The notes under the pieces are model-generated. The model was given only the letters and a program-made list of their open reading frames with translations. It searched no databases and was not told where the DNA came from. DNA of 64,000 bases from Mantamonas sphyraenae STR306 (taxonomy: Eukaryota > Protista > CRuMs). Positions within the stretch are counted from its first letter, which is position 1; the number at the start of each line of letters is the position of its first letter. The position numbers and the translations under genes are program-made. This document shows, in pieces, positions 8,708-55,696 of this stretch. The DNA is taken from contig JAPMXV010000016.1 in assembly GCA_026936335.1 (NCBI GenBank), positions 1-64,000 of the forward strand, in the 5' to 3' direction.

Positions 8708-11700
8708 ATGTCAGGTTTCAAGCCAAGCAACACGCTTGTCTTCCCTGCCCTACTTTTACTCTGTCTCTTGTGTGTACCAACAGTGACCCATGCTCGTCTC
8801 AATGGTACGTGCGCACGGAACGAGCAGCCGTGCATTTTCGTGTGGCGCTGAAAAAGAAAGTGCAAACGTGACAAGGCGACACGTCGGTGGACACAACATG
8901 GTCCTTCACACCTCACCGAATGATTTGATGGCCCAGGGCGTCCCCTGACGAATCAACTGTCCCCATCCATGTGTGTAGCGGTCCCAAACGCGCGTTCCAG
9001 ACTGACATTCCTCCTGCGCATTCCGCGATTTTGCATCGTCGCTCTCCAGTTGACCAGCAGGCGTCTGAAATTCTCAACTCATTCCAAAACCTATACGATG
9101 CCAAGACGCAAACCATGTCTTTGGCTTCGAAAGCCCTGCAACAGCTTGGCCCGATAGGACCCCTCTTTGCGGCCCTGAAAGGTGAGCAGCTCTCGAAGGT
9201 GCCACCTCCCGTCGCGGGGCCACAGGATCTTCGCGTTTCTGGACAGCTCCAAGTGTCTGGGGTCCCTCTAACGGTTTCCTTGATTGTACACGCGGCCAGC
9301 GATGGCACATCGTACGTCGAGCTGACCGTCACAGGTACCGATGCTGGAAAGGCGCTCTCAACACTGCTTCCCGTGCTGCTTCGCACCCAGCTGTCTGCAC
9401 TGGACTTTTCGGTGTTGGATACTCCTCTGCACTTGAAGGTCTCTTCAAAGTCGGGGATCGAGCTGCAAGGACTGCAGCTCAAGCATCTGCTTCAATTGCT
9501 GCATGGCTCAAAGGTGAATCTGCCCCCTGATTTGTCCTCGTTCACCCTGCCGTCTCTGAAATCGCCGTTATCCGGTATTCAGAGCAACCGCTCAGTAGCT
9601 TTCAAGGGAAGTATCTCCCCAAAGAAACTGAATCTGGGCCCAATCACCGTGAGCAAAGTCGCTCTGGACTTTGCGCTCGATCGTGTCAACAGCGAAGCCT
9701 CTCGCATGGATGTTCAACTCATCGGAGCAGCGACCTTTGGCGCTGTTCAAGTGAACAACTTCAATGCTCACTTGGTGGCCAGCAAAGAAGCCGTCAAGTT
9801 GGAAGGCTCAACAAATGTCGTTGCCGCTGGCATCGACATGCAGGCTTTGGTGAAGGGCAAGTTTTCCAAAACGTCCCCCACACAGATTTCGATTGCCTCT
9901 ACGGTCCCCAGCGGTGCGGCACGTGTAGGCAATGCCGTTTCCATCAACATCGAACAATTGAGCGTCGAGGTTGTCATCGGTGCAGCAAACGCCTCGTCGT
10001 TTTCGATTGCGGGCACTGCCCATCTCAAGGTGGACAACCCTCAAATCTCGGTGCCTGTGCAGGTGTCCAGCTCGGTGGGAGCCAAGGCCTCGGCCCTGGC
10101 CTTCCACGCTTCCAACGACAACGGACTGATTGTCTACGGCGGCGTCAAGATGACGCAACTGTCCTGCTCCGTGTGGACGACCACAGGCACAGAGTCAAAG
10201 AAGCGCGTGGACATCGAACTGGCTGGTGGCATGGTCAACGGCGACGCGAGCTTTGGCGTGCCGCGTGTGGCGTTCAAACTGAGCAACACAGGCTCGGACG
10301 GCAAGCTGGTTGTCAGCGGCGAGGCAGACGTGACTCTGCTGGGCCGCAAGCTGAAGGCTGGCCTGACGTACACGGACAAGACGCTGACCGCACGCGTGAG
10401 TGGCCACGAAACGCCACTCGTGGCGGTGGGCGAGACGCAAGTGTCGCTTGGTGACCTGGAGGTGGTTATCATGACGCAGAGCAAAGCAGTGAGCGTCAAG
10501 GGCGGCGTTGTGTTGACGCTGGCTGGCCTGGACAAGAAGGTGCCTCTTGGGCTCAGCCTGGATGGTGCGACGGGCAAGCTGAAGCTGAGCCGATCGGATT
10601 CTGCAGGCGTGGTGTCGTACATGGGTGTGTCTGTGACGAGTGTTGGAGTGGATGTGGAGGTGACCAAGGCCAAGGTGTCGACGCTAAAGGTGCATCTGGG
10701 TGGCAAAGCGACGCTGGGCGTGGTCGCGCTTACGGACGTGCAGCTCGTCGTGGACATCGCCAGTGGCGCACCGCTTTCGATTGCGGGCACTGCCCATCTC
10801 AAGGTGGACAACCCTCAAATCTCGTTGCCTGTGCAGGTGTCCAGCTCGATGGGAGCCAAGGCCTCGGCCCTGGCCTTCCACGCTTCCAACGACAACGGAC
10901 TGATTGTCTACGGCGGCGTCAAGATGACGCAACTGTCCTGCTCCGTGTGGACGACCACAGGCACAGAGTCAAAGAAGCGCGTGGACATCGAACTGGCTGG
11001 TGGCATGGTCAACGGCGACGCGAGCTTTGGCGTGCCGCGTGTGGCGTTCAAACTGAGCAACACAGGCTCGGACGGCAAGCTGGTTGTGAGCGGCGAGGCA
11101 GACGTGACTCTGCTGGGCCGCAAGCTGAAGGCTGGCCTGACGTACACGGACAAGACGCTGACTGCACGTGTGAGTGGCCACGAAACGCCACTCGTGGCGG
11201 TGGGCGAGACGCAAGTGTCGCTTGGTGACCTGGAGGTGGTTATCATGACGCAGAGCAAAGCAGTGAGCGTCAAGGGCGGCGTTGTGTTGACGCTGGCTGG
11301 CCTGGACAAGAAGGTGCCTCTTGGGCTCAGCCTGGACGGTGCGACGGGCAAGCTGAAGCTGAGCCGATCGGATTCTGCAGGCGTGGTGTCGTACATGGGT
11401 GTGTCTGTGACGAGTGTTGGAGTGGATGTGGAGGTGACCAAGGCCAAGGTGTCGACGCTAAAGGTGCATCTGGGTGGCAAAGCGACGCTGGGCGTGGTCG
11501 CGCTTACGGACGTGCAGCTCGTCGTGGACATCGCCAGTGGCGCACCGCTTTCGATTGCGGGCACTGCCCATCTCAAGGTGGACAACCCTCAAATCTCGTT
11601 GCCTGTGCAGGTGTCCAGCTCGGTGGGAGCCAAGGCCTCGGCCCTGGCCTTCCACGCTTCCAACGACAACGGACTGATTGTCTACGGCGGCGTCAAGATG

Positions 11701-14700
11701 ACGCAACTGTCCTGCTCCGTGTGGACGACCACAGGCACAGAGTCAAAGAAGCGCGTGGACATCGAACTGGCTGGTGGCATGGTCAACGGCGACGCGAGCT
11801 TTGGCGTGCCGCGTGTGGCGTTCAAACTGAGCAACACAGGCTCGGACGGCAAGCTGGTTGTGAGCGGCGAGGCAGACGTGACTCTGCTGGGCCGCAAGCT
11901 GAAGGCTGGCCTGACGTACACGGACAAGACGCTGACTGCACGTGTGAGTGGCCACGAAACGCCACTCGTGGCGGTGGGCGAGACGCAAGTGTCGCTTGGT
12001 GACCTGGAGGTGGTTATCATGACGCAGAGCAAAGCAGTGAGCGTCAAGGGCGGCGTTGTGTTGACGCTGGCTGGCCTGGACAAGAAGGTGCCTCTTGGGC
12101 TCAACCTGGACGGTGCGACGGGCAAGCTGAAGCTGAGCCGATCGGATTCTGCAGGCGTGGTGTCGTACATGGGTGTGTCTGTGACGAGTGTTGGAGTGGA
12201 TGTGGAGGTGACCAAGGCCAAGGTGTCGACGCTAAAGGTGCATCTGGGTGGCAAAGCGACGCTGGGCGTGGTCGCGCTTACGGACGTGCAGCTCGTCGTG
12301 GACATCGCCAGTGGCGCACCGCTTTCGATTGCGGGCACTGCCCATCTCAAGGTGGACAACCCTCAAATCTCGTTGCCTGTGCAGGTGTCCAGCTCGGTGG
12401 GAGCCAAGGCCTCGGCCCTGGCCTTCCACGCTTCCAACGACAACGGACTGATTGTCTACGGCGGCGTCAAGATGACGCAACTGTCCTGCTCCGTGTGGAC
12501 GACCACAGGCACAGAGTCAAAGAAGCGCGTGGACATCGAACTGGCTGGTGGCATGGTCAACGGCGACGCGAGCTTTGGCGTGCCGCGTGTGGCGTTCAAA
12601 CTGAGCAACACAGGCTCGGACGGCAAGCTGGTTGTGAGCGGCGAGGCAGACGTGACTCTGCTGGGCCGCAAGCTGAAGGCTGGCCTGACGTACACGGACA
12701 AGACGCTGACCGCACGCGTGAGTGGCCACGAAACGCCACTCGTGGCGGTGGGCGAGACGCAAGTGTCGCTTGGTGACCTGGAGGTGGTTATCATGACGCA
12801 GAGCAAAGCAGTGAGCGTCAAGGGCGGCGTTGTGTTGACGCTGGCTGGCCTGGACAAGAAGGTGCCTCTTGGGCTCAGCCTGGATGGTGCGACGGGCAAG
12901 CTGAAGCTAAGCCGATCGGATTCTGCAGGCGTGGTGTCGTACATGGGTGTGTCTGTGACGAGTGTGGGAGTGGATGTGGAGGTGACCAAGGCCAAGGTGT
13001 CGACGCTAAAGGTGCATCTGGGTGGCAAAGCGACGCTGGGCGTGGTCGCGCTTACGGACGTGCAGCTCGTCGTGGACATCGCCAGTGGCGCAAAGACTGT
13101 TTCTGTGTCCGGATCGGCGACGTTTGACTTTGCCAGCAAGGTCTCCGGCCAGGCTGCCATTGCCCTGGCTCGATCTCGCGGTGCACAGTCACTGATCGTC
13201 ACCGTCAATCGCATGCAGACTCGGAAGCTGGCCACCCTCCCTGGTGTGGGAAGCCTCGACCTGAATTCTCTTCTCTTCACGCACACACGCTCCTCCACCG
13301 GGAAGCCTGTGTGGTCTATCTCCGGTGAGGCCGCTCTCTCGCTCGACTTTGTCCCGGAGCCCCTTCAACTTGCCGTTTCCATGGACACTGCCTCCAAGTC
13401 CGTCACCCTTGTTGCCAACAAGGACAGCGGCTCCGTTAAGCTTCGCTCAGCCTATGTCACCCTTGGCACGACCTCTCTGGACGCGCGTCTGTCCCTCGCC
13501 TTCCCCATCAAGGACAACATTGCCTTTGACGCGCTTGATCTTCAGGTCACCGCGTCAAAGCAACACACCGTGGCCAAGGGCTCCTGCAAGCTCGCTTTGT
13601 TTGGAAGCGCAATCTCTGCTTCGGTGGCCATCAGCCAATCCCATCGTGGTGGCCAAAAGATGTCCGAGATCCATCTCAGCGCGGGTGCCCCAACCTCGTC
13701 CTCCGCCTCTCGTCCCTTGATTTCACTTGATGGCGTCGCTTCCGTCTCTGTGCACAAGCTTGCTGCCGTCGTCCGTCGCCAGACTGCCAAGACATCGTTC
13801 GAGCTCTCTGGTGAAGTCGGTGCAAAGGTCGACATTCTTGGCGACAAGCAGTTTGTCCTTGGCATGGCGTACAACTCTTCCTCGCGCAAGATCGTGTTCC
13901 CCTGTGTCACCTCTCGTGGCAACAACTGTCCCTCGCTTCCTGCAAACATCTTTGCATCCCTGAAACACGACAAGCTGCCCACAATTTCGTCCGCCATCCA
14001 ACACTTTTCCCTGGACAAGGCCACCGGTCTCACTCTCCATGGTGTGCTCCAGGTTCAAGACGTGCAACCTCCACTCGACAAGTTGCTCAACCTCAAACTG
14101 ACCTTTGCTGGCTCTGTTTCGGCAAAGGGTCTCTCGTTGACCCTCACAGCCGAACACCCGGAAATCGTCGTGGACATTCCAGACATTCCGCTTCCGGCAG
14201 GCAAGGCAATCCCGCTTGGCCGCACGGCAATCCGCTTCGAAAGGGGCCACATGCAGCTCGATCGCAAGGGCGTCTCCTTCTCCCTGCGTGCCTCTGTCGG
14301 CTTGCCCGCACGCCTCAACTACGTGTTTACCGTTGACCGCAGCGACGGACGATCGTCCACCGACTTTCGATCCTGCTGCAATCCCAACGCAAAATGGTGC
14401 TCACCGCGCACACAGACCACGTGCACCCCAAAGTTCAACCCCATTCAAACCTACGACGGCTCTGCAGACAGTCTCGTCGGCCTCGAGATCGGCTTCAGCA
14501 TTCAGGATGGCCTCTTTGGCAAGCTCTTCAGCACACCATTCACGTTTCTCAAACTCGTCACCGTCGACGACATCCCCTGGTTTGACCTCAATCTTCCCGG
14601 CGTCGGACAGGTTATGTTTCAGTCGCCCGACTTTGCTTTTGACGTCAAGTCCATGATGTTCAAGGCCAAAGGCTCGATTCGCATGCGCAACCTCAGGCTT

Positions 14701-17700
14701 CCGCTGTGGCCGATCAAAAAGGTCCTTGAAGCCACCGGAGGCGACGCCATGGCGAAACCCTTGCCAGATTCGGTCTCTCTTATGTCCTTTGACCTGAACA
14801 AGGGTGGTGAATTTGGCAAGAACCTGATTGATGTCCTAACTGCTGTCTCGCCTGCAAAGATCCCGCCTGCGCTCGTTGATCTCATCGGCTTGTCCTTCCG
14901 TGTCGTCGACACCTCCAAGCTTCCTGACGCCATGCGTGACTACCTGCGCGTCGAGGTTCCCCAGGACACCGCCTTTGACATCGCCATCGGCATGGACTCG
15001 TCCCTTGTCTTTGATCTCAAGTTTGCAGAGAACCCATTGCGCGTCCTCATCCCAACGGGCCCTGGCGTGATTACAGGTATCACCTTGAGCCACATTGGCC
15101 TCGGCGAAGTCCTCTTTGGCCAAGCTCTGCTTTCCAAGACCACGTTCTCCATCACCATGTTCAATCTCGCCGAGATAGCCTTGAGCTGGGTGTTGCCCAA
15201 GCCCAGTCTCACCGGAGACCGCTGCAAAAAGGCGTTTCCCCCCGTCAAATGCCTGGGCTTTGCCAACACAAAGGTCGAGCAGACCATTTCCATGGACGAC
15301 CTCTGGATCTTTTGGTTCTACCAGGCCGGTGTGCCTATTCCTGTGCCTGCGTTCCACAATCACCTGTTGTTCAAGTACCACAACATCCTAGGGGCACACT
15401 TTGAGACCGGCACGGAACTTCCCTTGCCTGCCGCAAACGTCGGAGGCCTGTTCAAGCTCGCCCCGGACATGCTTTCCTTTTTCACCGACAAGAAGGCACG
15501 CATGCCCGAAAAGCTCCCAGATGGACTCTCGCTGCGCTTTTCCGTGCGCAACACTCGTCTCGAGCTGCCCCAGTTTCTGGGAAGCTACCGGCTGGGAAGC
15601 AAGCCAAGCGAAAAGCATCTGTTCAGTGTGTCGGCCTGGGACGTGTTTGCAAAAGCTGCCAACGCCGTCAAGCACGTCAGTGTGAGCGGCTTGGTGTCTT
15701 TAGTGCCCCTCAAGTTCCGCAGCGGCACCTTGTCCATGCGTGTGCTCGACTGGCAGCTTGCAAAGGCCTCCTTTGCACTTGTCAACGTGGCCGAATGGAC
15801 GAAACTGGTCAAGGCCAAGTCCTCGTCCTCAGACTTTTTGCGTGAGCTTCATAGCTTACCAAAAGACCAACGCCACGAATTGCTGGCCATCATTCCTTCA
15901 AACCGCAAGGTGTCCAAGAAGGCCAGCGATTGGTCCTTTGTCACCGTCATCCTCGGTAAGCTGGACATTCCCAACGTCATGTCGCTGCGCACCCAACTGG
16001 CAGTCGGTGCCGTTCCCTCAGACGGCATTGAGGCGGGTCTCGGTTTGCGCATGGACGCACAGTTCTTGCAGGCGTTTGAGCTCATGATCAAGGGCTACAC
16101 CAAGGTGCGCCTGGTCAAGGGTCAGCCCGTCCTCTTCAAGCTTCACGGAGGCATCCGCGTTGCGATGAATGGCGATGATGTTGTCACTGGAACCGCGTAC
16201 CTCGATTCCACAACGGGCATTGGTGTGGACGCATCCATCCGCTTGTTTGATCTGCGCAAGCACGGCTTCTCCATTCGAGGCCGCGTGCGCGGAGAAATCT
16301 CCAAGAAGAGGTTTGCCTTGGAGGGTAGCACGCGCGTGGCTGTACGCGGCTTTCCGCTGGCGCAAGCGCTGATCCAGGGCAACTTTGCCATGACACACGA
16401 GTCTCTGTCGTTGAAGGGTACGTTCATGGGCAAGAAGGCCGACTTTGACGTCCACGTCAAGAAAGGCTTGCGCGCAGACATGTCTGCGTTTGGTATCAAG
16501 AACGTCCTCTACTTTGCCGGCCGCAGCAAATACGGTGGGCCCATGGTACGCGTGGGACGCCCCGGCCTTGAGCTGAGTGTCCACGCCACCGTCCTCCAAG
16601 TCACAGGCAAAGCCGACATGAAGATCACCAATCAAGGTTCTTTTGTCAAGCTCGAGGGCAACGTGATGGGCAACGACATGCTGCAGGCCAGTCTGCACCT
16701 GGAAACGCCCCAGCAGATCTACAACCCCGTTGGCGCAAGGGTGTTGGCTACAGCCAAGTTTGGCAACGGCAAGGTGCTCAAAATGTTCAAGACGATCTAC
16801 GATGCCGCACGCAAGGTGGCACAGGTGGCCGCAGGAGCAGCGCGTACTGCGCTGGAGGCAGCAAAGTTCAGCTATGAAGCCTTCAAGAAGGGTGTCCAAG
16901 CTGCCTACGACGCTGCAAAGGCCGCTCTCAAGGTGGCCAAGAGTGGATTGGACACGTTCGCAGGCGTCATGCGTGGCATGGGACTCTACAATGGCGGCGG
17001 CAGCGGCAGCGGCGGCCCCAAAAAGATTTCCAAGGCCGAGCTGGACAAGCTCATGAAGGCCCGCGGCTTGCGCGACGACCAAGGTCCCAACAGCGTTTAC
17101 GGCGAGGATGTTGTCCACAACAACGTGCATGGTTGTGAACTGTGGCGATATCACACTCGGAACGGTGACGAGTCGCAATGCCCCAGCGCGGAGGAGCTGC
17201 ACGACATGGGATACGGCATGTCACCCGCAGAAGCCGCTCGCCATGTGCGCGACGCAGACGAATTGCCCTGGTTGCGAAAACACCTGGCCAACATCGACGC
17301 ACATGTTCGCGCCATCGACGCGCTGGAAACCGAGCAAGTCGAACGCATGCTCGCCAAACTGGACGTGCGACGCAAGGCTGTGGCGCATCTCATTCACGTT
17401 GGCAAAGAGCGTGGCGAAGTGGGCCCCATCATGCAGTGGCTTCACGATCAGCAACAGATGATCAACGCTGGATCCCTTGCTGACGCCGAGGACGTCGACT
17501 TTGCTTCTGATACGTCACTGCTTGACCCCAGCAGCGAAGACGACACCATCAACAGTGACATCGACGACAACGGCTCGGATGACGAAGAAGTGCAGGAAGC
17601 CCATGCGAACCCTACCCAATGGATTTCGGAGGACGACGAAATCGTGGAAGAGCAAGAGATTGACCTTGAGGACGATGACGAACTGTTCGGCCGCAGACGC

Positions 17701-19638
17701 AGACGCAGGCGAAGGCGCCGCCGCCGCCGCCGAGGGTTCTGGGGACGCGTAAGCCGTGGCATCAGCAAAACGGCACGATCGGTGGGCCGTGGCATCAGCC
17801 GAGCTGCAAAGTCCGTGGGACGTGCCGTTCGAACTGTGGTGAGTGCTCTCAACCCGAAAGAGATCCTGAAGCGAGCAAAGAAGAAGCTGAAGGAGGGCAG
17901 CACAGCGATTGGCAATTTCATCAAAATCCTCAAGCCTGTCAAGTGGGCTTGGGATGCTCTGAAGAAGTTTGTCAAGGTGCTGATCGACGGCATGGAAAAG
18001 GGCGTGTCCCTGGCGCAAAAAGGCGTGGACGAAATCAAGCACAGCATCGATGCATTCCGACGCAAGGCAGGCATCGAGGAGTTGACCGAGAAGGTGGAAG
18101 GTCTTGTCAAGTTCATGGAGGACTTCCCACGCCTGGAAATCCGTACACTCGAGTTTGAGGCGTCCATGAACCGCATCCTGGACGCGGCTGTGGCGTTTCG
18201 CTTTGCACTGGATCTGGTCACTGACAACAAGGGCAGAGAAACCTACCAGCAGGAGTTCAAGGTGCGCATGAATTCGCTGGCTTCTGACCTCGTGCAGCTG
18301 ATGCACACTGCGTTTGACGACATCAAGGACTTTGTCATGGGCAACGGCAACGCTGTACGCAAGCGCAAGCAAGAGGGCGAACGTTGCTCAAACAACTTGG
18401 ATTGCTTTTCATTTGTGTGTGCTCGCCGCCAAGGCTTGCACCGCGTGTGTGTGAGCAAGGCAGGCATGGAAGCTGGCGAGTACTGCGACGTGAGCGCTCC
18501 TCGATGCGCACATGGCCTAGCGTGCGCACCTGACGCAGCAAACAACAAGCGAGCTCGCTGCGTGCTTCCCGCGTACTCTGAGTGCTCAGAGGGCAATCAG
18601 TGCTCGTCGGGCAAGTGCTCTACCTTGCTCAAGTTGTGTGTGCCAAAGACGGGCTTTGCGCTCGGCGAAGCTTGCGACAGCAGTGTCGAGTGTGCTTCAG
18701 GTCTTGAATGTTTCAAGAGGAGCGCAGGCGCGAATTCCATGACATGTCAGGCTCCCACCAAGCGTCAAGCAAACGCCCTCACAGACGGCGACCGCATCCG
18801 CTTGCGACTTGCAACTACGACGAGCGTACTCAAGGTGAAGGCCAAGGGCACCATCTTGAGCGCAGGCACTGCCCAAGACAGCACTGCAGACGAGCGTACC
18901 TGGTTCAGAGTCGTGGGTGTGGACGCAAAGCACGTCTGCCTGCAGCAAGCAAACGGCAAGTATGTGGGCGTCGTGGGCAGCGACGCCGTTCGCGCAGATG
19001 TGCTTGAATGTCCCACCAATCCGCGGGCACAGTGGGCGTGGCGATCAGTTGGCACGACCTTGGTCATGCTCAAAAACCGTGCGACCCAGGGCATCCTTGG
19101 TGTGTCGACGCAAGATCCAACCATAGTCCATGGCAGCGCGACGCAGACCAAACGCATGCTGTTTGCGGTTCTCCGTGCTCATCGTGATCTGCGTGGAGGT
19201 GACCGTGTTGCGTTGCAATTCTCGGTTGGGACAACGTCGCGCTGGTTGGCTCCTGCGAATGATCGCCTGACCCTGAGCTCCAAGTCGCACACCTTTGCCG
19301 TAGTCGAAACCTCTTCTGGGGAGCTGGCCTTCAAGGACGACACGGGACACTATGTGCGGTTCGAACCGTCCGGTAAGGTGTTGCTGCGTGGAGGAACAGA
19401 GATCAAGAGGAGCGCGCTCTTCAATGTGCTCCCTGTGGGTGAGGACGAGTCTGCGGTGCAGCTCGTTGCAGCCGACAGCAAGGAGACCATTGGAACGACC
19501 AAGGACAACAAGGTGGGTGCAGTGGACAGTGCCACCGCCCCTGCAGTGCACGTTTTCCGACGCACCACAAGCGATGCAGCACAGGTCCAGGCCGCCGAAC
19601 GCACCTGTGGAACGCAGGGCAAATGTCCAGGGTGGTGA
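8708..19638 (+). CDS. Giant secreted protein (~3,561 aa); join(8708..8804,9050..19638); signal peptide, long beta-strand region with 4x258-aa repeats, helical region with acidic/Arg14/amphipathic cassette, Cys-rich repeats, C-terminal beta-trefoil (fascin/ricin-B-like) region
   Basis: Signal peptide MSGFKPSNTLVFPALLLLCLLCVPTVTHA. GTACGT donor at 8805. ACTGAC branch (9001) and CTCTCCAG acceptor (9049) give the correct phase into the 10.6-kb open frame. Confidence 0.85.
10001..13092 (+). repeat. Coding tandem repeat, 4 near-identical copies of 774 bp (258 aa)
   Basis: Unit TTTCGATTGCGGGCACTGCC starts at 10001, 10775, 11549 and 12323. Only scattered single-base differences. Confidence 0.97.
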
Positions 19639-24752: not shown

Positions 24753-25906
24753 ATGTCCTCCTCCTCGGCAAACTCGGACCTCGACCGCCAAATTGAGCAG
24801 CTCATGCGCTGCGAGTACCTCAAAGAGTCCGAGGTCAAGGCCCTGTGCCAAAAGGCTCGAGAGATCCTGATGGAGGAATCCAACGTCCAGCGCGTCGACG
24901 CACCCGTCACCGTACGTCCACTGGCCCGTCGGCCCGCTTTCCCCCTTCATACACTCATCCAATGTCCACTCTCCGCCCTCCGCTCGTTCCCTCATCCCTC
25001 ACACCTCTCTTTCCCTCCCCTTCCACGCTTCGCATGCGCAGATCTGCGGCGACATCCATGGCCAGTTTTATGACCTGCGCGAGCTCCTCAAGGTTGGCGG
25101 TCAGTGCCCGGATACAAACTATCTCTTTATGGGCGACTTTGTCGACCGCGGCTTCTTCTCCGTCGAGACCTTCCTTCTCCTCCTCGCCCTCAAGGTGCGT
25201 TTGGGCTTTTTTGGGGCATTCCGCGCCCTTTCTTCACGCAACCCGTCCTAACCCGCCCTTTCCTCCTTTCCCACAGGTCCGCTACCCCGACCGCATTACC
25301 CTCATCCGTGGCAACCACGAGTCTCGCCAAATCACACAGGTCTACGGCTTCTACGACGAGTGCCTCCGCAAGTACGGCTCCGTCAACGTCTGGCGCTACT
25401 GCACCGACATCTTTGACTATCTCAGCCTCTCAGCCCTCATCGAAGACAAGTTCTTCTGTGTCCACGGCGGGCTCTCCCCCAGCATCCACACCCTCGACCA
25501 GATCCGCACCATCGACCGCAAGCAGGAGGTGCCCCACGACGGCGCCATGTGCGATCTTCTCTGGTCCGACCCGGACGAGGGCGTCTCCTCCCAAGGCTGG
25601 GGAATGTCTCCACGCGGCGCAGGCTTCCTCTTTGGCGGCACTGTCGTCGACGAGTTTCTCCACAAGAATGCCCTCACCAAGATTGCTCGCGCCCATCAGC
25701 TCGTCATGGAAGGGTACAAGCCCATGTTCGATGACAAGCTCTACACCGTCTGGTCCGCCCCCAACTACTGCTACCGCTGCGGCAACGTCGCTTCCATCCT
25801 CGAGCTTGACGAGAACCTCGCCACCACATTCAAGGTCTTTGAGGCTGCACCCCAAAACGAGCGCGGCAAGCCCGTCCGCAAGCAGGCCCCCGAGTACTTT
25901 CTCTGA
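24753..25906 (+). CDS. PPP4C: Ser/Thr protein phosphatase 4 catalytic subunit (313 aa); join(24753..24911,25042..25194,25277..25906)
   Basis: [57 protein letters not shown] and a C-terminal YFL. Canonical introns. Confidence 0.95.
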
Positions 25907-25953: not shown

Positions 25954-27243
25954 CTACCTCTTCCCTCCATGCATCGCTTGCTCGTACGCCACCTGCTGCG
26001 AAATGCTCGCAATAATCTTTAGCGCCTCCTCCTCCGCCGCCTCCTCTTGCTGCGCCGCCGACCTCATGTCAAACAAGTCCATCCCAAACAGCCCGCCTCC
26101 ACTCCCTCCTCCTCCTCCTCCTCCTCCTGCCCCTCCCCCGCCACCAAGCCGCGTCGACAGTGCTCCGTCGTCCTCTTCTTCGTCCGACTCTCCAAAGAAC
26201 GCGTCATCCAGCACACTCGCGTACCCACCTGGTTTCTTCACCTCCTCATCCTCTTCCTCCACCTCCTCCTCTTCCTCCTCATCCTCCCGCTCAACCTCAT
26301 CCTCACCCACACCGTTCTGCCTCTCTTCCTTTCCCCCCTCCCTCTTCTTCCCACCCCCCATCCCTCCCAACATCGCCTCGCTGAAACGCACACTCGTTGT
26401 CGGCCTAATGCCTGCTCCTCCGCCTGCCCCCGCTGTCCCACTCCCGTGCACAAAGCTCGTTGTTGCGCTCCCGAATTCATACCCGGTCTGCTTCCCATAC
26501 CGCTTGGCAGGCGCTATCTCCTGCTCACTTGCACTCCCCGAGAACATTTCCTTCAGCTTTAGGCTCGTTCCGCTAAACAACTGCTTGCCCTTGCCCTCCT
26601 TCCGCGACCAAAAGTCCTGGTCCAGCGATTTCCGCTCCACCTCTTCCGCGCTCCCACGCGGCGACATGCTCCCACGCGGTCCGTTCAGCTCCTCTTCCAT
26701 CGACCTGCTGCTTGTCGATCGGCCTGTATCCTCCTCCGTCTCCACAGCCTCGCTTTCCATCCCTTGCCCGTCCTCAGACCTGGGCCCCTCTCGCTTCCCA
26801 AACAACTTGAGAGCCCCCACACTCTGCAGACGTCCAAGTTTGCCCAGCAACCGCTCCTGTGCACGCGCCACCTTGTTCCCCTCTGGTTCTTCGTCATCCA
26901 ACCCTCCTCCCATCTGCCCCGCTCCTGTGTCCTCCCCCTCCGTCCCGCCTCCCGACCACTCCTCCCCCTCCAGCTCTCGCCGACGAGCATGCCGCGCCAA
27001 AAACAGCTGTGCAATCCTCTCTTGTGTTTCTTCCACTCCCATGTCTCCGTCTCCTCCTTCTCTTCCGCCCGTCTCCTCTCTCCCGCCGCCCTCTTTCTCG
27101 TCGCTCCCAACTTGCAACGCCACCCCTTCCCAGCCCCCGTCCTGGCCCATTTCCTCCTCCATCGCCCTCCTCCGCGCTTCCCGCCGCTCCTGAAGCCGTA
27201 CCAGCCGCGCCTGCAGCTCTGCGTCTGCCTCCTCTGCGTCCAT
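25954..27243 (-). CDS. Hypothetical low-complexity E/G-rich, probably disordered protein (~429 aa)
   Basis: Open frame from MDAEEADAELQARL fills the gap between PP4C and the next gene. Coiled-coil-like N-terminus, acidic and poly-Gly tracts, no recognised domain. Confidence 0.6.
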   Translation of the reverse strand: MDAEEADAELQARLVRLQERREARRRAMEEEMGQDGGWEGVALQVGSDEKEGGGREETGGREGGDGDMGVEETQERIAQLFLARHARRRELEGEEWSGGGTEGEDTGAGQMGGGLDDEEPEGNKVARAQERLLGKLGRLQSVGALKLFGKREGPRSEDGQGMESEAVETEEDTGRSTSSRSMEEELNGPRGSMSPRGSAEEVERKSLDQDFWSRKEGKGKQLFSGTSLKLKEMFSGSASEQEIAPAKRYGKQTGYEFGSATTSFVHGSGTAGAGGGAGIRPTTSVRFSEAMLGGMGGGKKREGGKEERQNGVGEDEVEREDEEEEEEVEEEDEEVKKPGGYASVLDDAFFGESDEEEDDGALSTRLGGGGGAGGGGGGGGSGGGLFGMDLFDMRSAAQQEEAAEEEALKIIASISQQVAYEQAMHGGKR

Positions 27244-27299
27244 GCCTTTGCCTGCCACTGCGCGTGCGCGTCTGCCCTTCCACCCCAACCACCACAACA

Positions 27300-30200
27300 A
27301 TGTCCCTCAACCCCGACATCGACGACCTGCTCGTCTGTGATTTTGAGTGTCCCTACGACGTCTTTGTCGAGGACAAGTACGAGTGCACATCCAACCCCGA
27401 TGGCATCATCTGTGCCGCTTACGCTGAAAACCTCCTCCTCTGGGATGTTCTCGAGCCCAAGATCCGTTCCTTTCGCCTCTTGCAGCCCCAGCACACCCAG
27501 TACGAGTACAGCTACGGCTCTGCAGACATCCGCGCCGCCTTTTCCCAATTCCTCGGTACGTTGACTGCCTCTTGGCCCACCTCCCTTGCCCAGTTCTTCC
27601 CCCCCCCCCGCCCTAACCCTCTCCCCTCCCTTCCCACACTGCCCAGGCCGCTTCACAACGCGCGTCATCCAGCCCAACCAGCTCATTGTTGCTTCTGGAT
27701 GCAGTGCAGTCCTCGACATTCTCGTGCACACCCTCTGCTGCCCAGACGAGGGCATTCTCGTTCCCACTCCGTGTTACCACAATTTCGAGCGTGCCTTTTC
27801 CTACCGCAACCAGACCCGTTTTCTCTCGGTTCCCACCATCGACCTCGATCCCGCAGCCCTCCAGGCTTCCCTCGATGAGCACAAGGCCACGGGTGTCACT
27901 GTCAAGGTTCGTTCCCCGTCTCCCCATCGCCCCCCACTTTCTCTCCGCACAGCCCGCGAGTTTTCCCGTTTTCCCGATCTCGTAAACACGCAAAAAAAAA
28001 GCCCCGTCCGTTTTTCCGGCTCACACCCGTCCACTGTACACTCCTCCCCAGGCCTTCCTTCTCACCACACCCCACTCTCCTACCGGCCGTGTCTACACTC
28101 GTTCCGAGCTCGAGGATGCCGTTCAGTTCTGTATGGACAATGGCCTCCACCTCATCGCAGACGAGACATACCTCCCTCACGTCTTCCAAAGCGACCGCTC
28201 CGAGCGTGCCCCGAGCGTCCTTGACCTCATTGGAGACGACGAGCAGCGCCAGCAGCGTGTCCACGTCATCACCTCCCTCAGCAAGCTCGGCATGGCCGGC
28301 TTCAAGGTCGGCACCCTGTTTTCCGCAAACGACGTCGTCATCCAGGCCTGCCGCAAGCTCTCCTGGTTCTGCCAAGTCTCCACCGACACCCAATTCCTCG
28401 TCACCCAGATCCTCAACGATGTCCCCTTTACCGATCGCCTCATTGCCATCAACAAGGACCGCTTGCGCGACGCCTACGCAAACGCCGTCCAGCACCTCCA
28501 GCAGCAGGGCATCCCCTACGTCGAGGCTGGCTGTGGCCTCACTGTCCTCCTCGACTTTCGCCATGCCATCGGCGACGATGAAGGACAGTGCTCCACGGAG
28601 GAAAAGCTCTTCAACCTCCTCCTCCACGACGCAAAGGTCCTCCTCACAAAGGGCACCGACATGCGCTGCGCACAGCCGGGCTTCTTCCGCCTCACCTTTG
28701 CCAACGACATGATCATGGTTACCGAGGCCATCCGCCGTCTCGGCGCCTACATGCGCACCCACCATCCCGCCGTACGCGCCGCCAGCGCCGCTCTACGCCT
28801 TCAAAAGATCTGGGCCCGCTCCGACCTCATCTTTGGTATGCTCACCGACGACGGCATTATGCAGAAGCCCATCGACCTGCGCCACCCCTTTATCTTCTAC
28901 CTCGGCCACCTTCCTGCCTTTGCCTGGAACCAGATCAAGGCTGTCACAGGTGCAGACACCTGGAACGAAGAGTTTGACACCTTGTTTGAGCGCGGCATCG
29001 ACCCGGACGTCGAGACGGGCAAGGTCCACAAGCATAGCTGCGACCGCAAGCGCACAGAGTGGCCCTCCGTCGACCAGATCCTCGCCTACCGCGACCAGGT
29101 CCGCACGGCCATCGTTGCCCAGCTCACCGGCATCTACGACGACCAGCAAGACTCCATGAAGTTCAACGGCCGCGTAGTCGAGCTCGCCATGGAGCACGAG
29201 CTCATGCACCAGGAAACCCTCCTCTACATGTTCCACCAGCTCGACCGCAAGTACATGACCCGTCCCGACGGCGCCTCCACCAGCATGCGCCTCGCCACAG
29301 ACATCCCTGTCGTCCGCAACCCCTACGTCCAGATCTCCGCCGGTCCGGTCTCCATGGGTGTCAACGAGGACGAGATCAAGTGGGGCTGGGACAACGAGTT
29401 TCCACGCCAGAAGGACGCCTGGGTCGACACCTTTGTCCTGCAAAAGTACCCCGTCACCAACGGCGACTACCTTGCCTTTGTCAACTCTGGCGGCTACGCC
29501 AACCGCAGCCTCTGGACCGACTCCGACTGGGAGTGGAAAGAAGGTAACTTGAGTGGTTGCACAGCATCCCCTTGCACACCCTTGCACTCCCTTGCACTCC
29601 CTTACCACCCCCCAACTCACACACCCCCGCCCGCAGAATGGAACATCACACACCCAATCTTCTGGTCCTACAACTCAGAGTCCTCAAAATGGGTCGTTTC
29701 CTCCATGTTCGACGTCATGCCCCTGAGCGACGTCCTCGACTGGCCTGTGACCGTCTCCCAGGCTGAAGCCAGCGCCTACTGTCGCTGGGTGAACGGCAGG
29801 CTGCCCACCGAAGAGGAATGGGTCCGTGCTGCCTACTCGACGCGCAACTCGGACAACCGCTCACGCAAGTACCCCTGGGGCAACGAGGAACCCACCCAGG
29901 CCCACGGCAACTTTCATTTCGGCACCTGGTCCCCGACCCCGGTCAACGCACACCCGCGCGGCGCGTCCGCCTGGGGCATCCACGATCTCCTTGGCAACGG
30001 CTGGGAGTGGACAAGTTCCAAGTTCAACGGCTTCCCGGGCTTCAAGGCAAACATCGAGACCTACCAGGGCTACTCCCAGGACTTTTTCGACGACAAGCAC
30101 TTTGTCATGCGCGGCGCCTCTTGGGCCACAGACGCACAGCTTATGCGCCCCTCCTTCCGCAACTGGTACCAGGGCCACTACCCCTACGTATTTAGCAAGT

Positions 30201-31384
30201 TCCGCGTCGCACGCGACTCTGGCCTTGCTGTGTCCCTCGATTCCGGCGCCTCATCCTCATCCTCCTCGTCCAGCCCATCCTCTCGTCCCGCCCGCACAGG
30301 CTCCGTCGGTTCCCTCGGCTCCGTCGACGACGAAGCTGCCCTCGCTGCTCAGATGCCTCTCGCAAAGGTCGACAACAACGCCACCCTCTGCCTCCTTTCC
30401 GACGGCAGCCTCTCCGGACTCGACGAGCAGTTTGCCGTCGATGTTCTCAGCGGCCTCAGTGGCCTCGAGAAGCGTGTGCCCAGCGTCTACTTCTACGACG
30501 ACGTCGGCTCCGAGCTCTTTGCCGCCATCACAGACCTCGAAGAGTACTACCCGACTCGTTGCGAGGCCGAGATCCTCGAGACCCACCGCAGCTCCCTCGC
30601 CGCCCTCCTCAACGAGACTGGCAAGAACCTCAACCTTGTTGAACTCGGCGCAGGCGACGGCAAAAAGACTGCCATCCTCCTCAAGTATCTGGTCCAGAGC
30701 AAGGTCGACGTCACCTACGTGCCCATCGACATCTCCCAGGGCGCCCTCCACTCTCTTCAGGGCAAGATGCGCAGCCAGTTTGCAGAGCAAGACCTCCGCA
30801 TCGTCAGCCTCGTGGCAGACAACATCGACGGTCTCCGCTGGGTCTCCCAACACAGTGACGACACCCAGCAGAGCGTCGTCATGTTCCTCGGCTCCAGCAT
30901 CGGCAACTACGACGAGGCTGGCGCAATCGTCTTTCTCCAGAGCCTTTGGCACGCCATGCAGCACAACGACTACCTCCTCATTGGCTTTGACCTCAAGAAG
31001 GATGTCAAGACCCTCGTCGCAGCCTACAACGATTCCCAGGGCGTCACCACAGAGTTCAACATGAACCTCCTCGACCGCATGAACCAAACCCTCAGTGCAG
31101 ACTTTGATCGCGACAGCTTCATCCACTGCGGCAACTACAACCCGCGCAGCGGCGCCATGGAAAGCTGGCTCATCTCCACAAAGCCCCAGGAAGTCTATCT
31201 CGGCAAGCTCAAGAAGCGAGTTCGCTTTGCCGAGTGGGAGGGTATGCGCACAGAGTACTCCTTCAAGTACACACGTGCCGACATTGCCATGCTTGCCGAG
31301 GCCAGTGGCTTCACCGTCGTCGACAACTTTGAAGACTCCAACGGCTGGTTTGTCGACTCCCTCTGGCGTGTCGTCAAGGAGTAG
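27300..31384 (+). CDS. Trifunctional ergothioneine-biosynthesis candidate (~1,251 aa): ACC-synthase-like PLP enzyme + Egt1/EgtB sulfoxide synthase (DinB_2 + FGE-like) + EgtD histidine N-alpha-trimethyltransferase; join(27300..27555,27647..27906,28052..29543,29637..31384)
   Basis: PLP domain: NPDGII..AENLL, LVPTPCY, TPHSPTG, IADETY, SLSKLG, GFFRLTFA. Sulfoxide synthase: KPIDLRHPFIFYLGH, FERGIDPDV, EHELMHQETLLYM, GWDNE, GNGWEWT, YQGYSQDFFD, FRNWY. EgtD: YFYDDVGSELF, EYYPTR, LVELGAGDGKKT, FLGSSIGN, AYND..GVT, RTEYSFKY. Confidence 0.9.
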
Positions 31385-31514: not shown

Positions 31515-32594
31515 ATGACCTCCATTGTCAAGGCCTCGTCTGCCAACACACAGCTGGAGTCCTATCTCACCAACTCGGAAGACCTCGTCTCCTCCTCCTC
31601 CTCCTCCTCCACCAGCGAGGCTTCTGGCGCAAAGACCCACGCCTTCCAGCCCTACGAGAACAACGGCGGGTAGGTCGTCATGCCTTGACCCTCGCTCCCC
31701 TCACACCCACCCAACCTCACACCCACCACCCTCCCTCTTACCCATTCTCCAAACCCACCCTGCCTCTCTGTCCTCCCTTCCGCCCGGCCCCTGCTCCCAC
31801 AGCACCTGCGTCGCCATCGCTGGAGCCGACTTTGTTGTCCTCGCTGCAGACACACGCATGAGCTCAGGCTACTCCATTGTGTCCCGCACAGTGTCCAAGA
31901 CCACCAAGCTGTACGTCTGCACACCCTCTTTCAGCAGCCCACCTCCTTCACGCCCTGCCAAGTCCCCGTTCCATTCCTCCCGACTTTCCGGCCCGAGAAT
32001 ATCCCCTCTTTCCGCCCCCCACCGCGCTCACCCGTCCTTCTCCCCACCCCCGCCACCCCTCCTTTATTTCCCCGCCCACTCTCTTCCAGCACCGACAAGT
32101 GTGTCATCGGCACCTCGGGCATGCAGTCCGACACCTGCACTCTGCACAAGACCCTCACCGCACGCGCCGTCATGTATCGCCACGATCACAAAAAGACCAT
32201 GACCACCACGGCCATTGCCCAACTCCTCGGAAACACCCTCTACTACCGGCGGTTCTTCCCCTACTACACATTCAACATCCTTGCCGGCCTTGACGAAGAA
32301 GGCAAGGGTGCTGTCTACTCCTACGACGCCGTTGGCTCCTTCCAGCGCGTCGGCTTCAACTGCTCCGGCACAGGCCAGAACCTCATCCAGCCCCTCCTCG
32401 ACAACCAGCTCGGCCAGCAGCACCAGCGAATCAAGCGCGAAGAGCCCCTCTCTCTCGAAGAGACCGTCGACCTCATCAAGGACTGCTTCTCCACCGCCTG
32501 CGAGCGCGACATTTACACCGGCGACACCGTCGAGATTTACACCATCAGTGCCAACGGCCTTGACATGGAAGAGTTTGAGTTGAAGATGGACTAA
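31515..32594 (+). CDS. PSMB1: 20S proteasome subunit beta type-1 (beta6/Pre7), ~255 aa; join(31515..31669,31803..31910,32090..32594)
   Basis: FQPYENNGGTCVAIAGADF..AADTR, LYYRRFFPYY, LAGLDEEGKGAVYSYD.VGS, ERDIYTGD. Confidence 0.93.
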
Positions 32595-44108: not shown

Positions 44109-47100
44109 ATGTCCAGCAGCAGCAGCTACGCAGCTGACGACCATACAGCAGAGGGTGCTCAGACCATCGTTGTTCAGGAGCTCGTCGAACGCATCCGTTT
44201 GTCGGTATGTGTCACACACGCACACCCAGAACGTTCATTTCCCCTCTTCGGCAAGAATAATCTCCCCGTGCTCACATTCCCTGCCCATGACCCGCTGGGC
44301 TCCCACCTCCCACCTCTCTCCGTAACCGTTCCCGTCCCAGCTGCCTCTCTTTCGCCTCGAGCGCCTCGACACCCTTGCTGTCGAACAGGCCCGCTTCAAC
44401 GAGGCCACCACCACACAGACCTTTGTCGACTCCTCGCGCTATATGATTGAGACATGCGCAAAGGCTCTCATCCCTCTCCTCACAGACATTACCAAGGTAT
44501 GCTCCCGACCCCCCGTCTCGCTGCCCGTCCTTCCCGCTTCCTTGCCCACACCCTGCACAACTCTCCTCCAACTTTTTGTGCTGACGACACCCTCTCGTTG
44601 CCGCCCCGCAGCTTCTCCACTCTCCCACCCTCAACCTCTTCACCGACGTCTCCCTGGCCAACAATAACGTCGAGAGCATGCAGACCAGCCAGATCCTCGT
44701 CCTCCATCTCCTCTCAGACTCCATCCAAGCTGCAACCAAGCTCGTTCGTTTCCCCTCTTCCAATCCGATCCCCAGCCACAACCCCGTCACCACACACTCC
44801 GCTCACACGCTCCTCTCCCCCATGTCCCCACGCCTGTATTTCCGTTTCCACACCCACAGCAATCCACGGAGCTGCGCAACCATCGCCTTTCCGTCCGTAT
44901 GGAGCGTCTCACTCAAAACATGGTCAGTTTTTCACCGGCCCTTTTTCACTCCAAACCCGTCCTTGGCCCCTGCCGCTCACACACACACGCCTCACACACA
45001 ACACCGCCCACAGGAGTACCTCCAGGACAACACCTTCCAAGGCCTGACCCACGTCCTCTTTGCCCTCATCACAAAGCCTCCCCAGACCGGCCTCGACACA
45101 GCCAACCTCGTCGCTGCCGCAGGCTCCGTCCTCAACGCCCTTTCCGTCTCCCTCTTTGATCCCATCCTCACAAAGATCAGCCAGATGTTTGCCGCCAAAA
45201 ACACAAAGGATGACGACCACGAGTCTCACGTCATGGCCCTCATCAACTTTCTCAACATGGACCGCACCCGCCTCTCCAAGGTCATGTCCACCCTCGCCAT
45301 GCTTGCCCCCAAGTTCAAAAAGAACGCCCAGAGCACCTTTGGCGCAGTCATTCGCGATGCCATCCTCCGCTGGATCCAGGGCAACCCCTACGACTTTGCC
45401 GCCTTCCTCGAGGACGGCCAAACCCTGAAAAACTCCCACACCAACGTCCTCTTTGACATGGTCGACAGCTGGGCTGACAACAACAAGCGCAAGAACCTCT
45501 TCTGGCCCGTGCAAACCATGCTCCTCCTCCTCTCCCCAGACATCCTCAACTCCTACAACAGCAACAGCGACAACCAGTGCACAAAGTTCATTGCCGCCCT
45601 CGTCAAGGCCGTCAACAAGACAAAGAGCCTCGAACACGTCGCCTGCGCCTGTCTCACAGACCTCATCCGCGCTGCCACCTATGTCCAGGAGAAGGACGGC
45701 TCCGTCCTCCACACCCTCGTCGCAGAGTTTACCGAGCTCCTTACCGCAAAGCTCTTCGACCCCAAGAAACTCTTTGCCAACTCGGACGGCCATTTTGACG
45801 CACAACTCCTCACCACCTTTCTCGTCGCCCAGTTCAACCTCGATCCCAGGGGCACCGTCACAAACCTGTTCCCATCCCTCCTCCGCGACGGCATGCCCTC
45901 TCACTACAAAATGGTCATTGTCCAGGCCCTCCTCAGCATCTCAGAGAGCGGCCAGATCCTCAGCTGGTACCCCAGTGTCCAGATGGCCTTCTCCATGGCC
46001 CCGCAGCTCCGCGCCCTCTTTCAGGACTTTGCCTCCAAGTACGTCTCCGAATCCTCCTCCTCCTCCTCAAAGACAAAGGAGAAGGGCAAGGCTGCAGAGG
46101 CTCGTGACGTCGACTTCCGTACCATGGCTGCCCTTCTCCAACTCTTCTACAACCAATTCCAAACCGCCCTCGTCACCTACCACGTCGACTCTTCCCAGAT
46201 CATCCAGGATGCACAGGCCGTCATTGCTGGATGCTGCAGGCTCATCCTAGGCTACGAGACGCACGACGTCAGCCGCTGGGCTCTCGCCGCCCTCCAGGAA
46301 CTCCACAAGCCCCAAAACATCGCCCAGTGGTGCCCTGGCAACAAATTTCCCGCCTTTTGGCAGGTCTCGGACGCTGTCAACGACGTCTGCGCAGACATGC
46401 TCCTCGCCACCGATCAGGATCACCACCTCAACCTCCTCATCGAGGCCGTCATCGACATCCAGCGCAGGCGGAACGAGTTTGTCGCCCTCTATGCAAACGA
46501 CGAGGAAGCTCCCTACCCTCCCTCCTCCTCCTCCTCTCGCGCAGGCGTAGGTCGCCTCGAGGTTGCCATCCTCACTCTCGTCCGTTCGGGCTCTCCTCAG
46601 CTTTGCTCAAAGGCCGCCACCCTCGCCGGCCTCCTTTGCGACGAAGTCGAGCTGTTTTCCTCCTACTCCCTTCCGTCCGGCGAGCCCATCAACACCCTCG
46701 GTGACAACATCGACAGCTACCGCAAGCTCTCCCAGACCGGCGTCCTCGTCACTGGCCGCGCTGCACAACACAAAACCATCCGCACCCTCCTCCGCCAAAT
46801 CACGAGCGAAACAGAGGGCAACATCCGCGCCTGGTACCACCTCTACGAGCTCTGGGCCCCCACCACCACAAACATCCTCGACCTCCACCATCCAGACTAC
46901 ACCGGAAAGGCATCCTCCTCCTCAAAGAAGAAGGAAACCATCCAGGAGGAGATCCAGGCCCTCGAGGTGGCAATCACAGAGCACAAGAGCGAGTGGCACA
47001 ACACCACAGGACTCCTTGCTGCCCTCGCAGGTGTCGTTGCAGACCGCTCCCGTGCTTCCACTTCCAGCCGCTCCTCCCGCGACCTCCCGCGCTCTTCCAC

Positions 47101-54105: not shown

Positions 54106-54136
54106 GGATGCCAACACAAAGAAAGAGTTGGGGCTG

Positions 54137-55629: not shown

Positions 55630-55696
55630 GAACACACAGTTTCAATGTTCTTTCTCAAACACACCTCGACACACACGCACACAGTGGGTTCGTTGA

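What the first reader, a model, noticed from the sequence alone, without database searches (positions are those of the whole stretch)
27300..31384. One-gene ergothioneine pathway: PLP enzyme + sulfoxide synthase + EgtD in a single polypeptide
Seen: one spliced frame with no stop between three intact domains. They are an ACC-synthase-like fold-type-I PLP domain (~27300-28760), an Egt1/EgtB non-heme-iron sulfoxide synthase (~28790-30220; His triad from LGH and EHELMH, Tyr in YQGYSQDFFD) and an EgtD trimethyltransferase (~30380-31384), with a Ser-rich linker before EgtD. Established: the cysteine-using fungal route needs three activities. Fungal Egt1 is EgtD-then-EgtB, and its C-S lyase (Egt2/EgtE, class-V type) is a separate protein. 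The KPIDLRHPFIFY / FERGIDPDV / MHQETLLYM motifs are Egt1-like rather than OvoA-like. Inference: the N-terminal domain is the C-S lyase, so His + SAM + Cys + O2 could give ergothioneine from one chain. The domain order (lyase-EgtB-EgtD) is reversed relative to fungi, and I do not recognise it as described.
Basis: partly seen in the sequence, partly recalled or inferred. Interest (0 to 1): 0.92.

Follow-up and report, generated by a model that had tools for sequence, protein, structure and literature searches.

The report
Protist three-in-one ergothioneine enzyme
A single protist gene joins the two known enzymes that build the antioxidant ergothioneine to a third, ACC-synthase-like enzyme that probably does the last step; the same fusion occurs in many unrelated protists, and I found no paper describing it.

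Summary
Real. A four-exon gene (1,251 aa, 27300-31384) in a genome matching Mantamonas sphyraenae joins an ACC-synthase-like PLP domain, an Egt1-type sulfoxide synthase and EgtD. Both junctions lie inside exons. It is not a one-off: 14 further sequence groups share the PLP-EgtB(-EgtD) order, among them Chromosphaera, Plasmodiophora, Mesostigma and two amoebozoan transcripts. A permuted EgtD-PLP-EgtB form sits on giant-virus-like contigs. The sulfoxide synthase carries the fungal Egt1 motif with the hercynine-binding Asn-Trp pair, so ergothioneine rather than ovothiol. The EgtD histidine site is intact. The lyase role is inferred: the catalytic Lys/Asp/Arg are nearly invariant, the ACS-defining Gln is absent, and ACS-like proteins are documented Cβ-S lyases. 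Against it, this copy has Ser for a PLP-binding Asn, and the genome holds a separate Egt2-like gene. No RNA run was listed and no activity is shown. Ten paper searches found no description. The hydrozoan OvoB-OvoA chain is a precedent for ovothiol, with the same order but different parts. This scan noted it only on this DNA. Verdict: new variant of a known pathway.

The parts
27300..27555 (+). Exon 1: start of the ACS-like PLP domain (AYAEN and YEYSYG motifs)
   Evidence: family profile match E 8e-21
27556..27646 (+). Intron 1 (91 nt, GT-AG)
27647..27906 (+). Exon 2: PLP domain middle (SGC loop; PLP-stacking Tyr codon at 27775)
27907..28051 (+). Intron 2 (145 nt, GT-AG)
28052..28762 (+). Exon 3, first part: PLP domain C-half. 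Ser in place of Asn217 (28076), Asp (28160), Tyr (28169), Schiff-base Lys (28283), Lys in place of Arg293 (28304), carboxylate Arg (28688)
28763..28798 (+). Short PLP-to-sulfoxide-synthase junction inside exon 3; similar length in most homologues
28799..29543 (+). Sulfoxide synthase, DinB-like domain and start of the FGE-like domain; iron His at 28907, 29195, 29207
29544..29636 (+). Intron 3 (93 nt, in frame, stop-free)
29637..30217 (+). Exon 4, first part: FGE-like domain; catalytic Tyr at 30062, hercynine-binding Asn-Trp at 30161-30166
30218..30420 (+). Ser-rich, poorly conserved linker (shorter in M. plastica)
30421..31384 (+). EgtD histidine N-alpha-trimethyltransferase domain to the stop; SAM loop at 30641, Glu282 equivalent at 31253
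   Evidence: (TIGR03438 299.7 bits, cut-off 290.9)

Best explanation
A trifunctional ergothioneine synthase of a widespread protist family. The C-terminal EgtD domain trimethylates histidine with 3 SAM to hercynine (well supported by sequence). The central non-heme-iron domain (3 His, catalytic Tyr, Egt1-type substrate site) couples hercynine C2 with free cysteine and O2 to hercynylcysteine sulfoxide (well supported by motif identity with fungal Egt1). The N-terminal ACS-like PLP domain then cleaves the Cβ-S bond by β-elimination, releasing pyruvate, ammonia and ergothioneine sulfenic acid, which a cellular thiol reduces to ergothioneine (inferred). The PLP domain is probably dimeric like other fold-type-I enzymes (established knowledge, not tested). 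The model suggests a compact lyase-synthase unit with EgtD on a flexible tether.
For: One frame, junctions inside exons. Same order in 14 further groups at 70% identity, including transcript-derived Rhizamoeba (PLP-EgtB junction), Flabellula (both junctions) and M. plastica (EgtB-EgtD junction). Sulfoxide-synthase 16-site motif identical to the commonest motif of EgtD-first (fungal-type) Egt1 proteins, 53 of 112, with Asn-Trp; published OvoA has (Y/F)-Ala there (PMC11030361). 72 of 80 bacterial loci of the same subfamily have egtD beside them. EgtD residues intact (PMC8593015). PLP family profile: ACS best at E 2e-87, next family E 9e-41; Foldseek TM 0.85 to ACS. Among 20 homologues, Asp245 is kept in all 20, Lys285 in 18 of 19 aligned, Arg419 in all 17 aligned, and Gln98 in none. 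ACS and non-seed-plant ACS-like proteins are Cβ-S lyases; Q98 is dispensable and D245 is required (PMC8580319). The PLP domain stays directly before the synthase even when EgtD moves to the N-terminus. A full-length homologue model has mean pLDDT 89, a 3-residue helix-to-helix junction at high confidence and a low-confidence synthase-EgtD linker.
Against: Asn217 is Ser in this copy, and N217A kills both AtACS7 activities (PMC8580319). Tyr248 is often Phe/Leu in homologues, and the PLP domain is the least conserved of the three (30 of 361 columns at 90% or more, against 97 of 433 and 60 of 306). The domain has decayed in Flabellula (no Lys) and is absent from close relatives (Pyxidicula transcript, one Plasmodiophora paralogue, Rotaria). 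The genome has an Egt2/LCD-like gene. Non-specific lyases and even free PLP can do this step (PMC4493562, PMC13674229). The documented ACS-like lyase substrate is cystine, not this sulfoxide. No RNA run was listed for this DNA.
Confidence: 0.68

Rival explanations
1. EgtB and EgtD work as in Egt1, but the PLP domain of this copy is weak or dead, or serves as a dimerisation module. The free Egt2/LCD-like enzyme (G000:C8) or another lyase finishes the pathway.
For: Asn217 to Ser. Decay in Flabellula and apparent losses in relatives. Egt2-like gene present, with Egt2 structures among its top PDB hits at E 2e-15.
Against: Lys, Asp, Tyr160, Tyr248 and Arg are all kept here. Ser at this site recurs in two other homologues. 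The Arg-to-Lys change also occurs in the genome's free ACS-like paralogue, which keeps Asn217, Asp245, Tyr248 and Lys285. Egt2-like genes are kept by plants that lack EGT1 (PMC13358676), so their presence says little.
Confidence: 0.14
2. The PLP domain is active but on another substrate that serves the pathway or changes its product: freeing cysteine from cystine or cystathionine, removing the cysteine sulfinate side product, or transaminating a histidine derivative.
For: The only published substrate of ACS-like lyases is cystine (PMC8580319). Class I PLP enzymes are promiscuous, and aminotransferases are the next-best hits.
Against: The one missing step of the cysteine route is a PLP β-elimination. 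The same lyase-synthase adjacency arose with OvoB in hydrozoans (PMC8433421). Cystine cleavage consumes a sulfur donor rather than supplying one.
Confidence: 0.12
3. The product is not ergothioneine (ovothiol-type C5 product, unmethylated 2-thiohistidine or selenoneine).
For: The domain scores slightly higher on the OvoA model (257 bits) than on EgtB (226). Regioselectivity has switched repeatedly in this family (PMC11030361, PMC13674229).
Against: An annotated fungal Egt1 shows the same ranking (140 against 117 bits). The Asn-Trp hercynine pair and a fused EgtD are present. The SenA motif differs.
Confidence: 0.04
4. Artefact: adjacent genes or a mis-assembly read as one frame.
For: No RNA for this species could be laid on it.
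Against: Junctions lie inside exons with no intron signal. Same order in transcripts and in intronless genes of other species.
Confidence: 0.02

Closest known systems
Fungal Egt1 + Egt2 (Neurospora crassa, Schizosaccharomyces pombe; also non-flowering plants, PMC13358676)
   Same: EgtD and a cysteine-type sulfoxide synthase in one chain; identical active-site motif; related sequence (31-35% identity).
   Different: Egt1 is EgtD-then-EgtB with no lyase, and Egt2 is a separate class-V enzyme. Here the order is PLP-EgtB-EgtD, the PLP domain is class I/II ACS-like, and the synthase falls outside the fungal clade.
Hydrozoan OvoB-OvoA fusion (PMC8433421)
   Same: PLP lyase, sulfoxide synthase and methyltransferase on one chain, in the same order.
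   Different: It makes ovothiol, with an OvoA-type synthase, a ring N-methyltransferase and an OvoB-type lyase. Here the parts are an Egt1-type synthase, EgtD and an ACS-like domain; OvoB (5Z0Q) is not among the 60 best PDB hits. Most likely an independent, convergent fusion (inference).
Plant ACC synthases and ACS-like Cβ-S lyases (AtACS7, PpACL1; PMC8580319)
   Same: Closest sequence and fold; Asp245, Lys285, Arg419 and Tyr160 kept.
   Different: No Gln98; Tyr100 equivalent lost; one-residue deletion after the Lys; Asn217 is Ser in this copy; fused to a sulfoxide synthase.
Cyanobacterial EgtB-IV (PDB 8VIH/8VIG)
   Same: Best solved-structure match (E 3e-55); R-x-Y-H, Asp, catalytic Tyr and Asn-Trp motif.
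   Different: Stand-alone bacterial enzyme. The window protein is closer to Egt1-like and Acidobacteria/Myxococcota-type sequences.

Membership tests
EgtD histidine N-alpha-methyltransferase | TIGR03438 above its curated cut-off | tested here: met
   299.7 bits against 290.9
EgtD histidine N-alpha-methyltransferase | SAM loop and histidine-site residues (Tyr39, Phe47, Tyr56, Asn166, Tyr206, Thr213, Glu282, Ser284) | tested here: met
   All present (residues from PMC8593015). Met252 is Ser, as in 46 of 48 stand-alone homologues.
Egt1-type (type III) sulfoxide synthase domain | 3-His iron site and catalytic Tyr | tested here: met
Egt1-type (type III) sulfoxide synthase domain | Hercynine-binding Asn plus aromatic residue; no gamma-glutamyl Asp | tested here: met
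   Asn-Trp-Tyr-Gln, identical to the fungal Egt1 rows. Positions mapped by alignment to 8VIH/4X8B and PMC11030361.
Egt1-type (type III) sulfoxide synthase domain | C2 sulfoxidation of hercynine with cysteine in vitro | not testable with these tools
   needs assay
Fungal/plant Egt1 protein | Methyltransferase N-terminal to the FGE-sulfatase domain, no PLP domain | tested here: not met
   Order is PLP-EgtB-EgtD; outside the fungal clade
OvoA | (Tyr/Phe)-Ala histidine-binding pair; TIGR04344 cut-off; OvoA-type C-terminal methyltransferase | tested here: not met
   Asn-Trp instead; 257 against 400 bits; C-terminal domain is EgtD
Genuine ACC synthase | Gln equivalent to AtACS7 Q98 | tested here: not met
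   Glu here, and Gln in no family member
ACS-like Cβ-S lyase | ACS-like sequence and fold with Lys285, Asp245, Arg419 and a stacking Tyr | tested here: met
ACS-like Cβ-S lyase | Asn217 (required in AtACS7) | tested here: not met
   Ser in this copy; Asn in 9 of the 13 PLP-first homologue rows aligned at that site
ACS-like Cβ-S lyase | Measured β-lyase activity | not testable with these tools
   needs assay
Egt2/EgtE (class V C-S lyases) | Aminotran_5 / TIGR04343 membership | tested here: not met
   Only Aminotran_1_2 matches; this locus is absent from the PF00266 and TIGR04343 genome searches
Hydrozoan OvoB-OvoA fusion | OvoB-like lyase and OvoA-type synthase | tested here: not met
   The hydrozoan sequence itself was not compared.

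The most novel reading that the evidence does not exclude
An old, undescribed family of single-chain ergothioneine synthases spread over at least four eukaryote supergroups, with a permuted form carried by marine giant viruses. In it an ACC-synthase-like domain acts as a dedicated hercynylcysteine-sulfoxide lyase: a third lyase lineage for thiohistidine synthesis, a defined physiological substrate for a non-plant ACS-like enzyme, and a one-gene ergothioneine cassette.
Probability: 0.5. Interest if true: 0.75.

Novelty: new variant of a known kind. Interest (0 to 1): 0.62.

Why it matters
The reviews read here describe ergothioneine synthesis in bacteria, fungi and, lately, non-flowering plants. 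This family would add CRuMs, amoebozoans, an ichthyosporean, a rhizarian and Mesostigma, with an architecture that an 'EgtD-first' search criterion misses. It offers a natural single-gene version of what engineers build as artificial fusions (PMC13547098). It would give ACS-like proteins outside seed plants a concrete job as sulfoxide lyases, which bears on the proposal that ACC synthase arose from a Cβ-S lyase (PMC8580319). It makes the 'unidentified lyase' question (PMC5790434) directly testable with one Lys mutant. The chemistry itself is known.

Tried and rejected
RNA evidence: no run was listed. The word-index search with the PLP C-half among long proteins missed all fusions, and the profile search missed plant ACS, so blanks from that tool were given no weight. 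Its four close 'stand-alone' hits, where checked, were intron-split pieces of the same fusion. A GTDB scan with the PLP alignment could not run. The OvoA-over-EgtB HMM ranking was rejected as evidence for ovothiol because fungal Egt1 ranks the same way. The idea that the genome has no other lyase was tested and failed. The idea that the Gly/Ala/Lys changes in the phosphate site show decay was weakened by the free paralogue. IMG/VR gave no relative of the permuted form, and the AAAATTGA counts are at about the level expected by chance for 25% GC, so viral origin is unproven. The trees do not resolve one origin of the fusion. The EgtB-IV structure paper was not held; Gerdol 2019 and the Seebeck type I-V papers were not read. 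As the operators asked, the joined spliced protein was not built, searched or folded: exons were searched by reference, the genomic frame 28052-31381 was used as it reads (31 intron codons included, masked as X in the tree), and structure models are of database homologues (P0259, P0157).
Full report
Source and gene model. The assembly has 25,061,354 bases in 78 contigs, matching the Mantamonas sphyraenae assembly (25.06 Mb, 78 contigs; PMC10492846). The identification rests on that match and on a 59%-identical M. plastica homologue. The gene has four exons (27300-27555, 27647-27906, 28052-29543, 29637-31384) with GT-AG introns, consistent phases and 1,251 codons. From 28052 the genomic frame is open to the stop, so both domain junctions lie inside exons; no further intron-like stretch was found there. 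Intron 3 is in frame and stop-free, and is confirmed by an exact 31-residue gap against a transcript-derived homologue. Pfam gives Aminotran_1_2, DinB_2, FGE-sulfatase and Methyltransf_33 in that order. It holds the genome's only EgtD domain and only sulfoxide synthase match. The joined spliced protein was not built or searched; searches used exons or the genomic frame by reference.

The fusion is a family. Exhaustive and word-index searches returned the same order in Chromosphaera perkinsii, Plasmodiophora brassicae (CEO98147.1), Mesostigma viride, Rhizamoeba saxonica (PLP and synthase; partial transcript), Flabellula baltica and many unnamed contigs, those checked mostly with eukaryotic neighbours. 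At 70% identity these make 14 groups besides this gene. Apparently partial or stand-alone hits, where checked, were intron-split pieces of the same three-domain gene. The PLP-to-synthase junction aligns almost without gap to the Rhizamoeba transcript, and the synthase-EgtD junction is in the M. plastica transcript. In the synthase tree this gene sits in a 97% SH-aLRT clade with Chromosphaera, three amoebozoans and uncultured eukaryotes, apart from fungal and plant Egt1. This fits an old origin, but other fusions branch elsewhere and neither tree shows or excludes a single origin. Some relatives lack the PLP domain (Pyxidicula, a tandem Plasmodiophora paralogue, Rotaria). A second arrangement, EgtD-PLP-EgtB, forms one fully supported clade in both trees; its PLP domain is divergent but related.

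Sulfoxide synthase. The best structure match is EgtB-IV (E 3e-55), then EgtB-I and OvoA. HMM ranks do not discriminate, since an annotated fungal Egt1 also scores higher on the OvoA model. Sixteen active-site positions, placed by alignment to the solved structures and guided by the composite motifs of PMC11030361, are identical to the commonest pattern among 112 EgtD-first proteins: three His, the catalytic Tyr and the Asn-Trp pair that marks hercynine-accepting, C2-selective enzymes, where OvoA has (Tyr/Phe)-Ala. The position that is Asp in gamma-glutamylcysteine-using EgtB-I is Tyr, as in fungal Egt1, which points to free cysteine (inference). Of 80 bacterial loci of this subfamily, 72 have egtD alongside and none has an ACS-like gene; one has a weak class-I hit. 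The PLP domain therefore seems to have been added in eukaryotes.

EgtD. TIGR03438 is passed (299.7 against 290.9 bits), and the SAM loop and histidine-site residues listed in PMC8593015 are kept.

PLP domain. A profile of 13 fused domains matches ACC synthases at E 2e-87, with the next family at 9e-41. A model of one homologue (pLDDT 86) has ACS as its top 14 Foldseek hits, TM about 0.85. It is not class V like Egt2/EgtE, and OvoB is not among the best hits. In AtACS7 numbering, Asp245 is kept in all 20 homologues, Lys285 in 18 of 19 and Arg419 in all 17 that align there, and Gln98 in none. PMC8580319 shows that ACS and several ACS-like proteins are Cβ-S lyases on cystine, that Gln98 is needed only for ACC synthesis and that Asp245 is needed for the lyase: the pattern expected of a lyase that is not an ACC synthase. 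The same paper shows N217A kills activity, and this copy has Ser there. The domain is also the least conserved of the three and has decayed in Flabellula. Changes in the phosphate site are shared with a free ACS-like paralogue in the same genome and so need not mean decay. The genome also encodes an Egt2/LCD-like enzyme, so the fused domain is not the only candidate, although such genes persist in plants without EGT1.

Architecture. A model of a 1,173-aa homologue folds all three domains (mean pLDDT 89, pTM 0.75). The last PLP helix joins the first synthase helix through three residues at high confidence, while the link to EgtD is of low confidence. With the permuted form, where EgtD moves but PLP stays before the synthase, this suggests that lyase and synthase are the coupled pair (inference).

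Mechanism. His plus 3 SAM gives hercynine; hercynine plus Cys plus O2 gives the sulfoxide; PLP β-elimination gives pyruvate, ammonia and the sulfenic acid, which a thiol reduces to ergothioneine as for EgtE (PMC4493562). Steps one and two follow from motif identity with characterised enzymes; step three is inferred. I put the whole at 0.68, a weak or dead PLP domain in this copy at 0.14, another PLP role at 0.12, another product at 0.04 and artefact at 0.02. No RNA run was listed.

Novelty. Ten searches of the held library found no account of this architecture or of ergothioneine synthesis in these protists (among others), and the reviews searched mention only two-enzyme fungal and multi-gene bacterial routes; most subscription papers are not covered. 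The principle has a precedent: hydrozoan OvoB-OvoA, called the only reported single chain with all three activities for ovothiol (PMC8433421). This is best filed as a new variant of a known pathway: known chemistry, new architecture, a probably new lyase lineage and a wide, unreported distribution. Interest 0.62.

Noticed in passing
L122:10001-13429, L124:8237-11551, L022:2409-5801 (P0127 = VVU95286.1, P0110, P0206; also P0202): Permuted EgtD-PLP-EgtB fusion on gene-dense, intronless, ORFan-rich marine contigs (25% GC in L122 and L124, 40% in L022) beside RFC small subunit, NAD ligase, PEPCK, U-box, ankyrin and kinesin genes. They look like giant-virus contigs, but no hallmark gene was checked and IMG/VR gave no relative.
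   Followed up: partly
L121:1213-2526 (G000:C8): Egt2/L-cysteine-desulfhydrase-like class V gene, 437 aa; Egt2 structures among its top PDB hits.
   Followed up: partly
L014:1429-2820, minus strand (G000:C26): Stand-alone ACS-like gene with Asn217, Asp245, Tyr248 and Lys285 intact; a natural control for the fused domain.
   Followed up: partly
P0007 and P0163 (Plasmodiophora PBRA_006259 and PBRA_006261): Near-neighbour sister paralogues, one with and one without the PLP domain.
   Followed up: partly
P0012, P0177, P0182 (Rotaria): Bdelloid rotifer proteins with EgtB-then-EgtD order and an intact ergothioneine-type motif: possible ergothioneine synthesis in an animal, or transfer or contamination.
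   Followed up: no
window 25954-27299: A minus-strand, Glu/Gly-rich ORF with no Pfam match starts head to head; its likely ATG at 27243 leaves only about 56 bp to the fusion's ATG.
   Followed up: no
L029-L108: Egt1-like stand-alone sulfoxide synthases next to egtD are common in Acidobacteriota and other soil and sediment bacteria; the 'fungal' type III motif is not confined to fungi.
   Followed up: partly
window 8971-19638: 3,555-codon ORF with no Pfam match.
   Followed up: no
window 24845-25906, 31515-32594, 44678-52393, 52423-55635: Ordinary eukaryotic neighbours: PPP-family phosphatase, proteasome beta subunit, neurofibromin-like RasGAP, PPIP5K. No pathway clustering around the fusion.
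   Followed up: no
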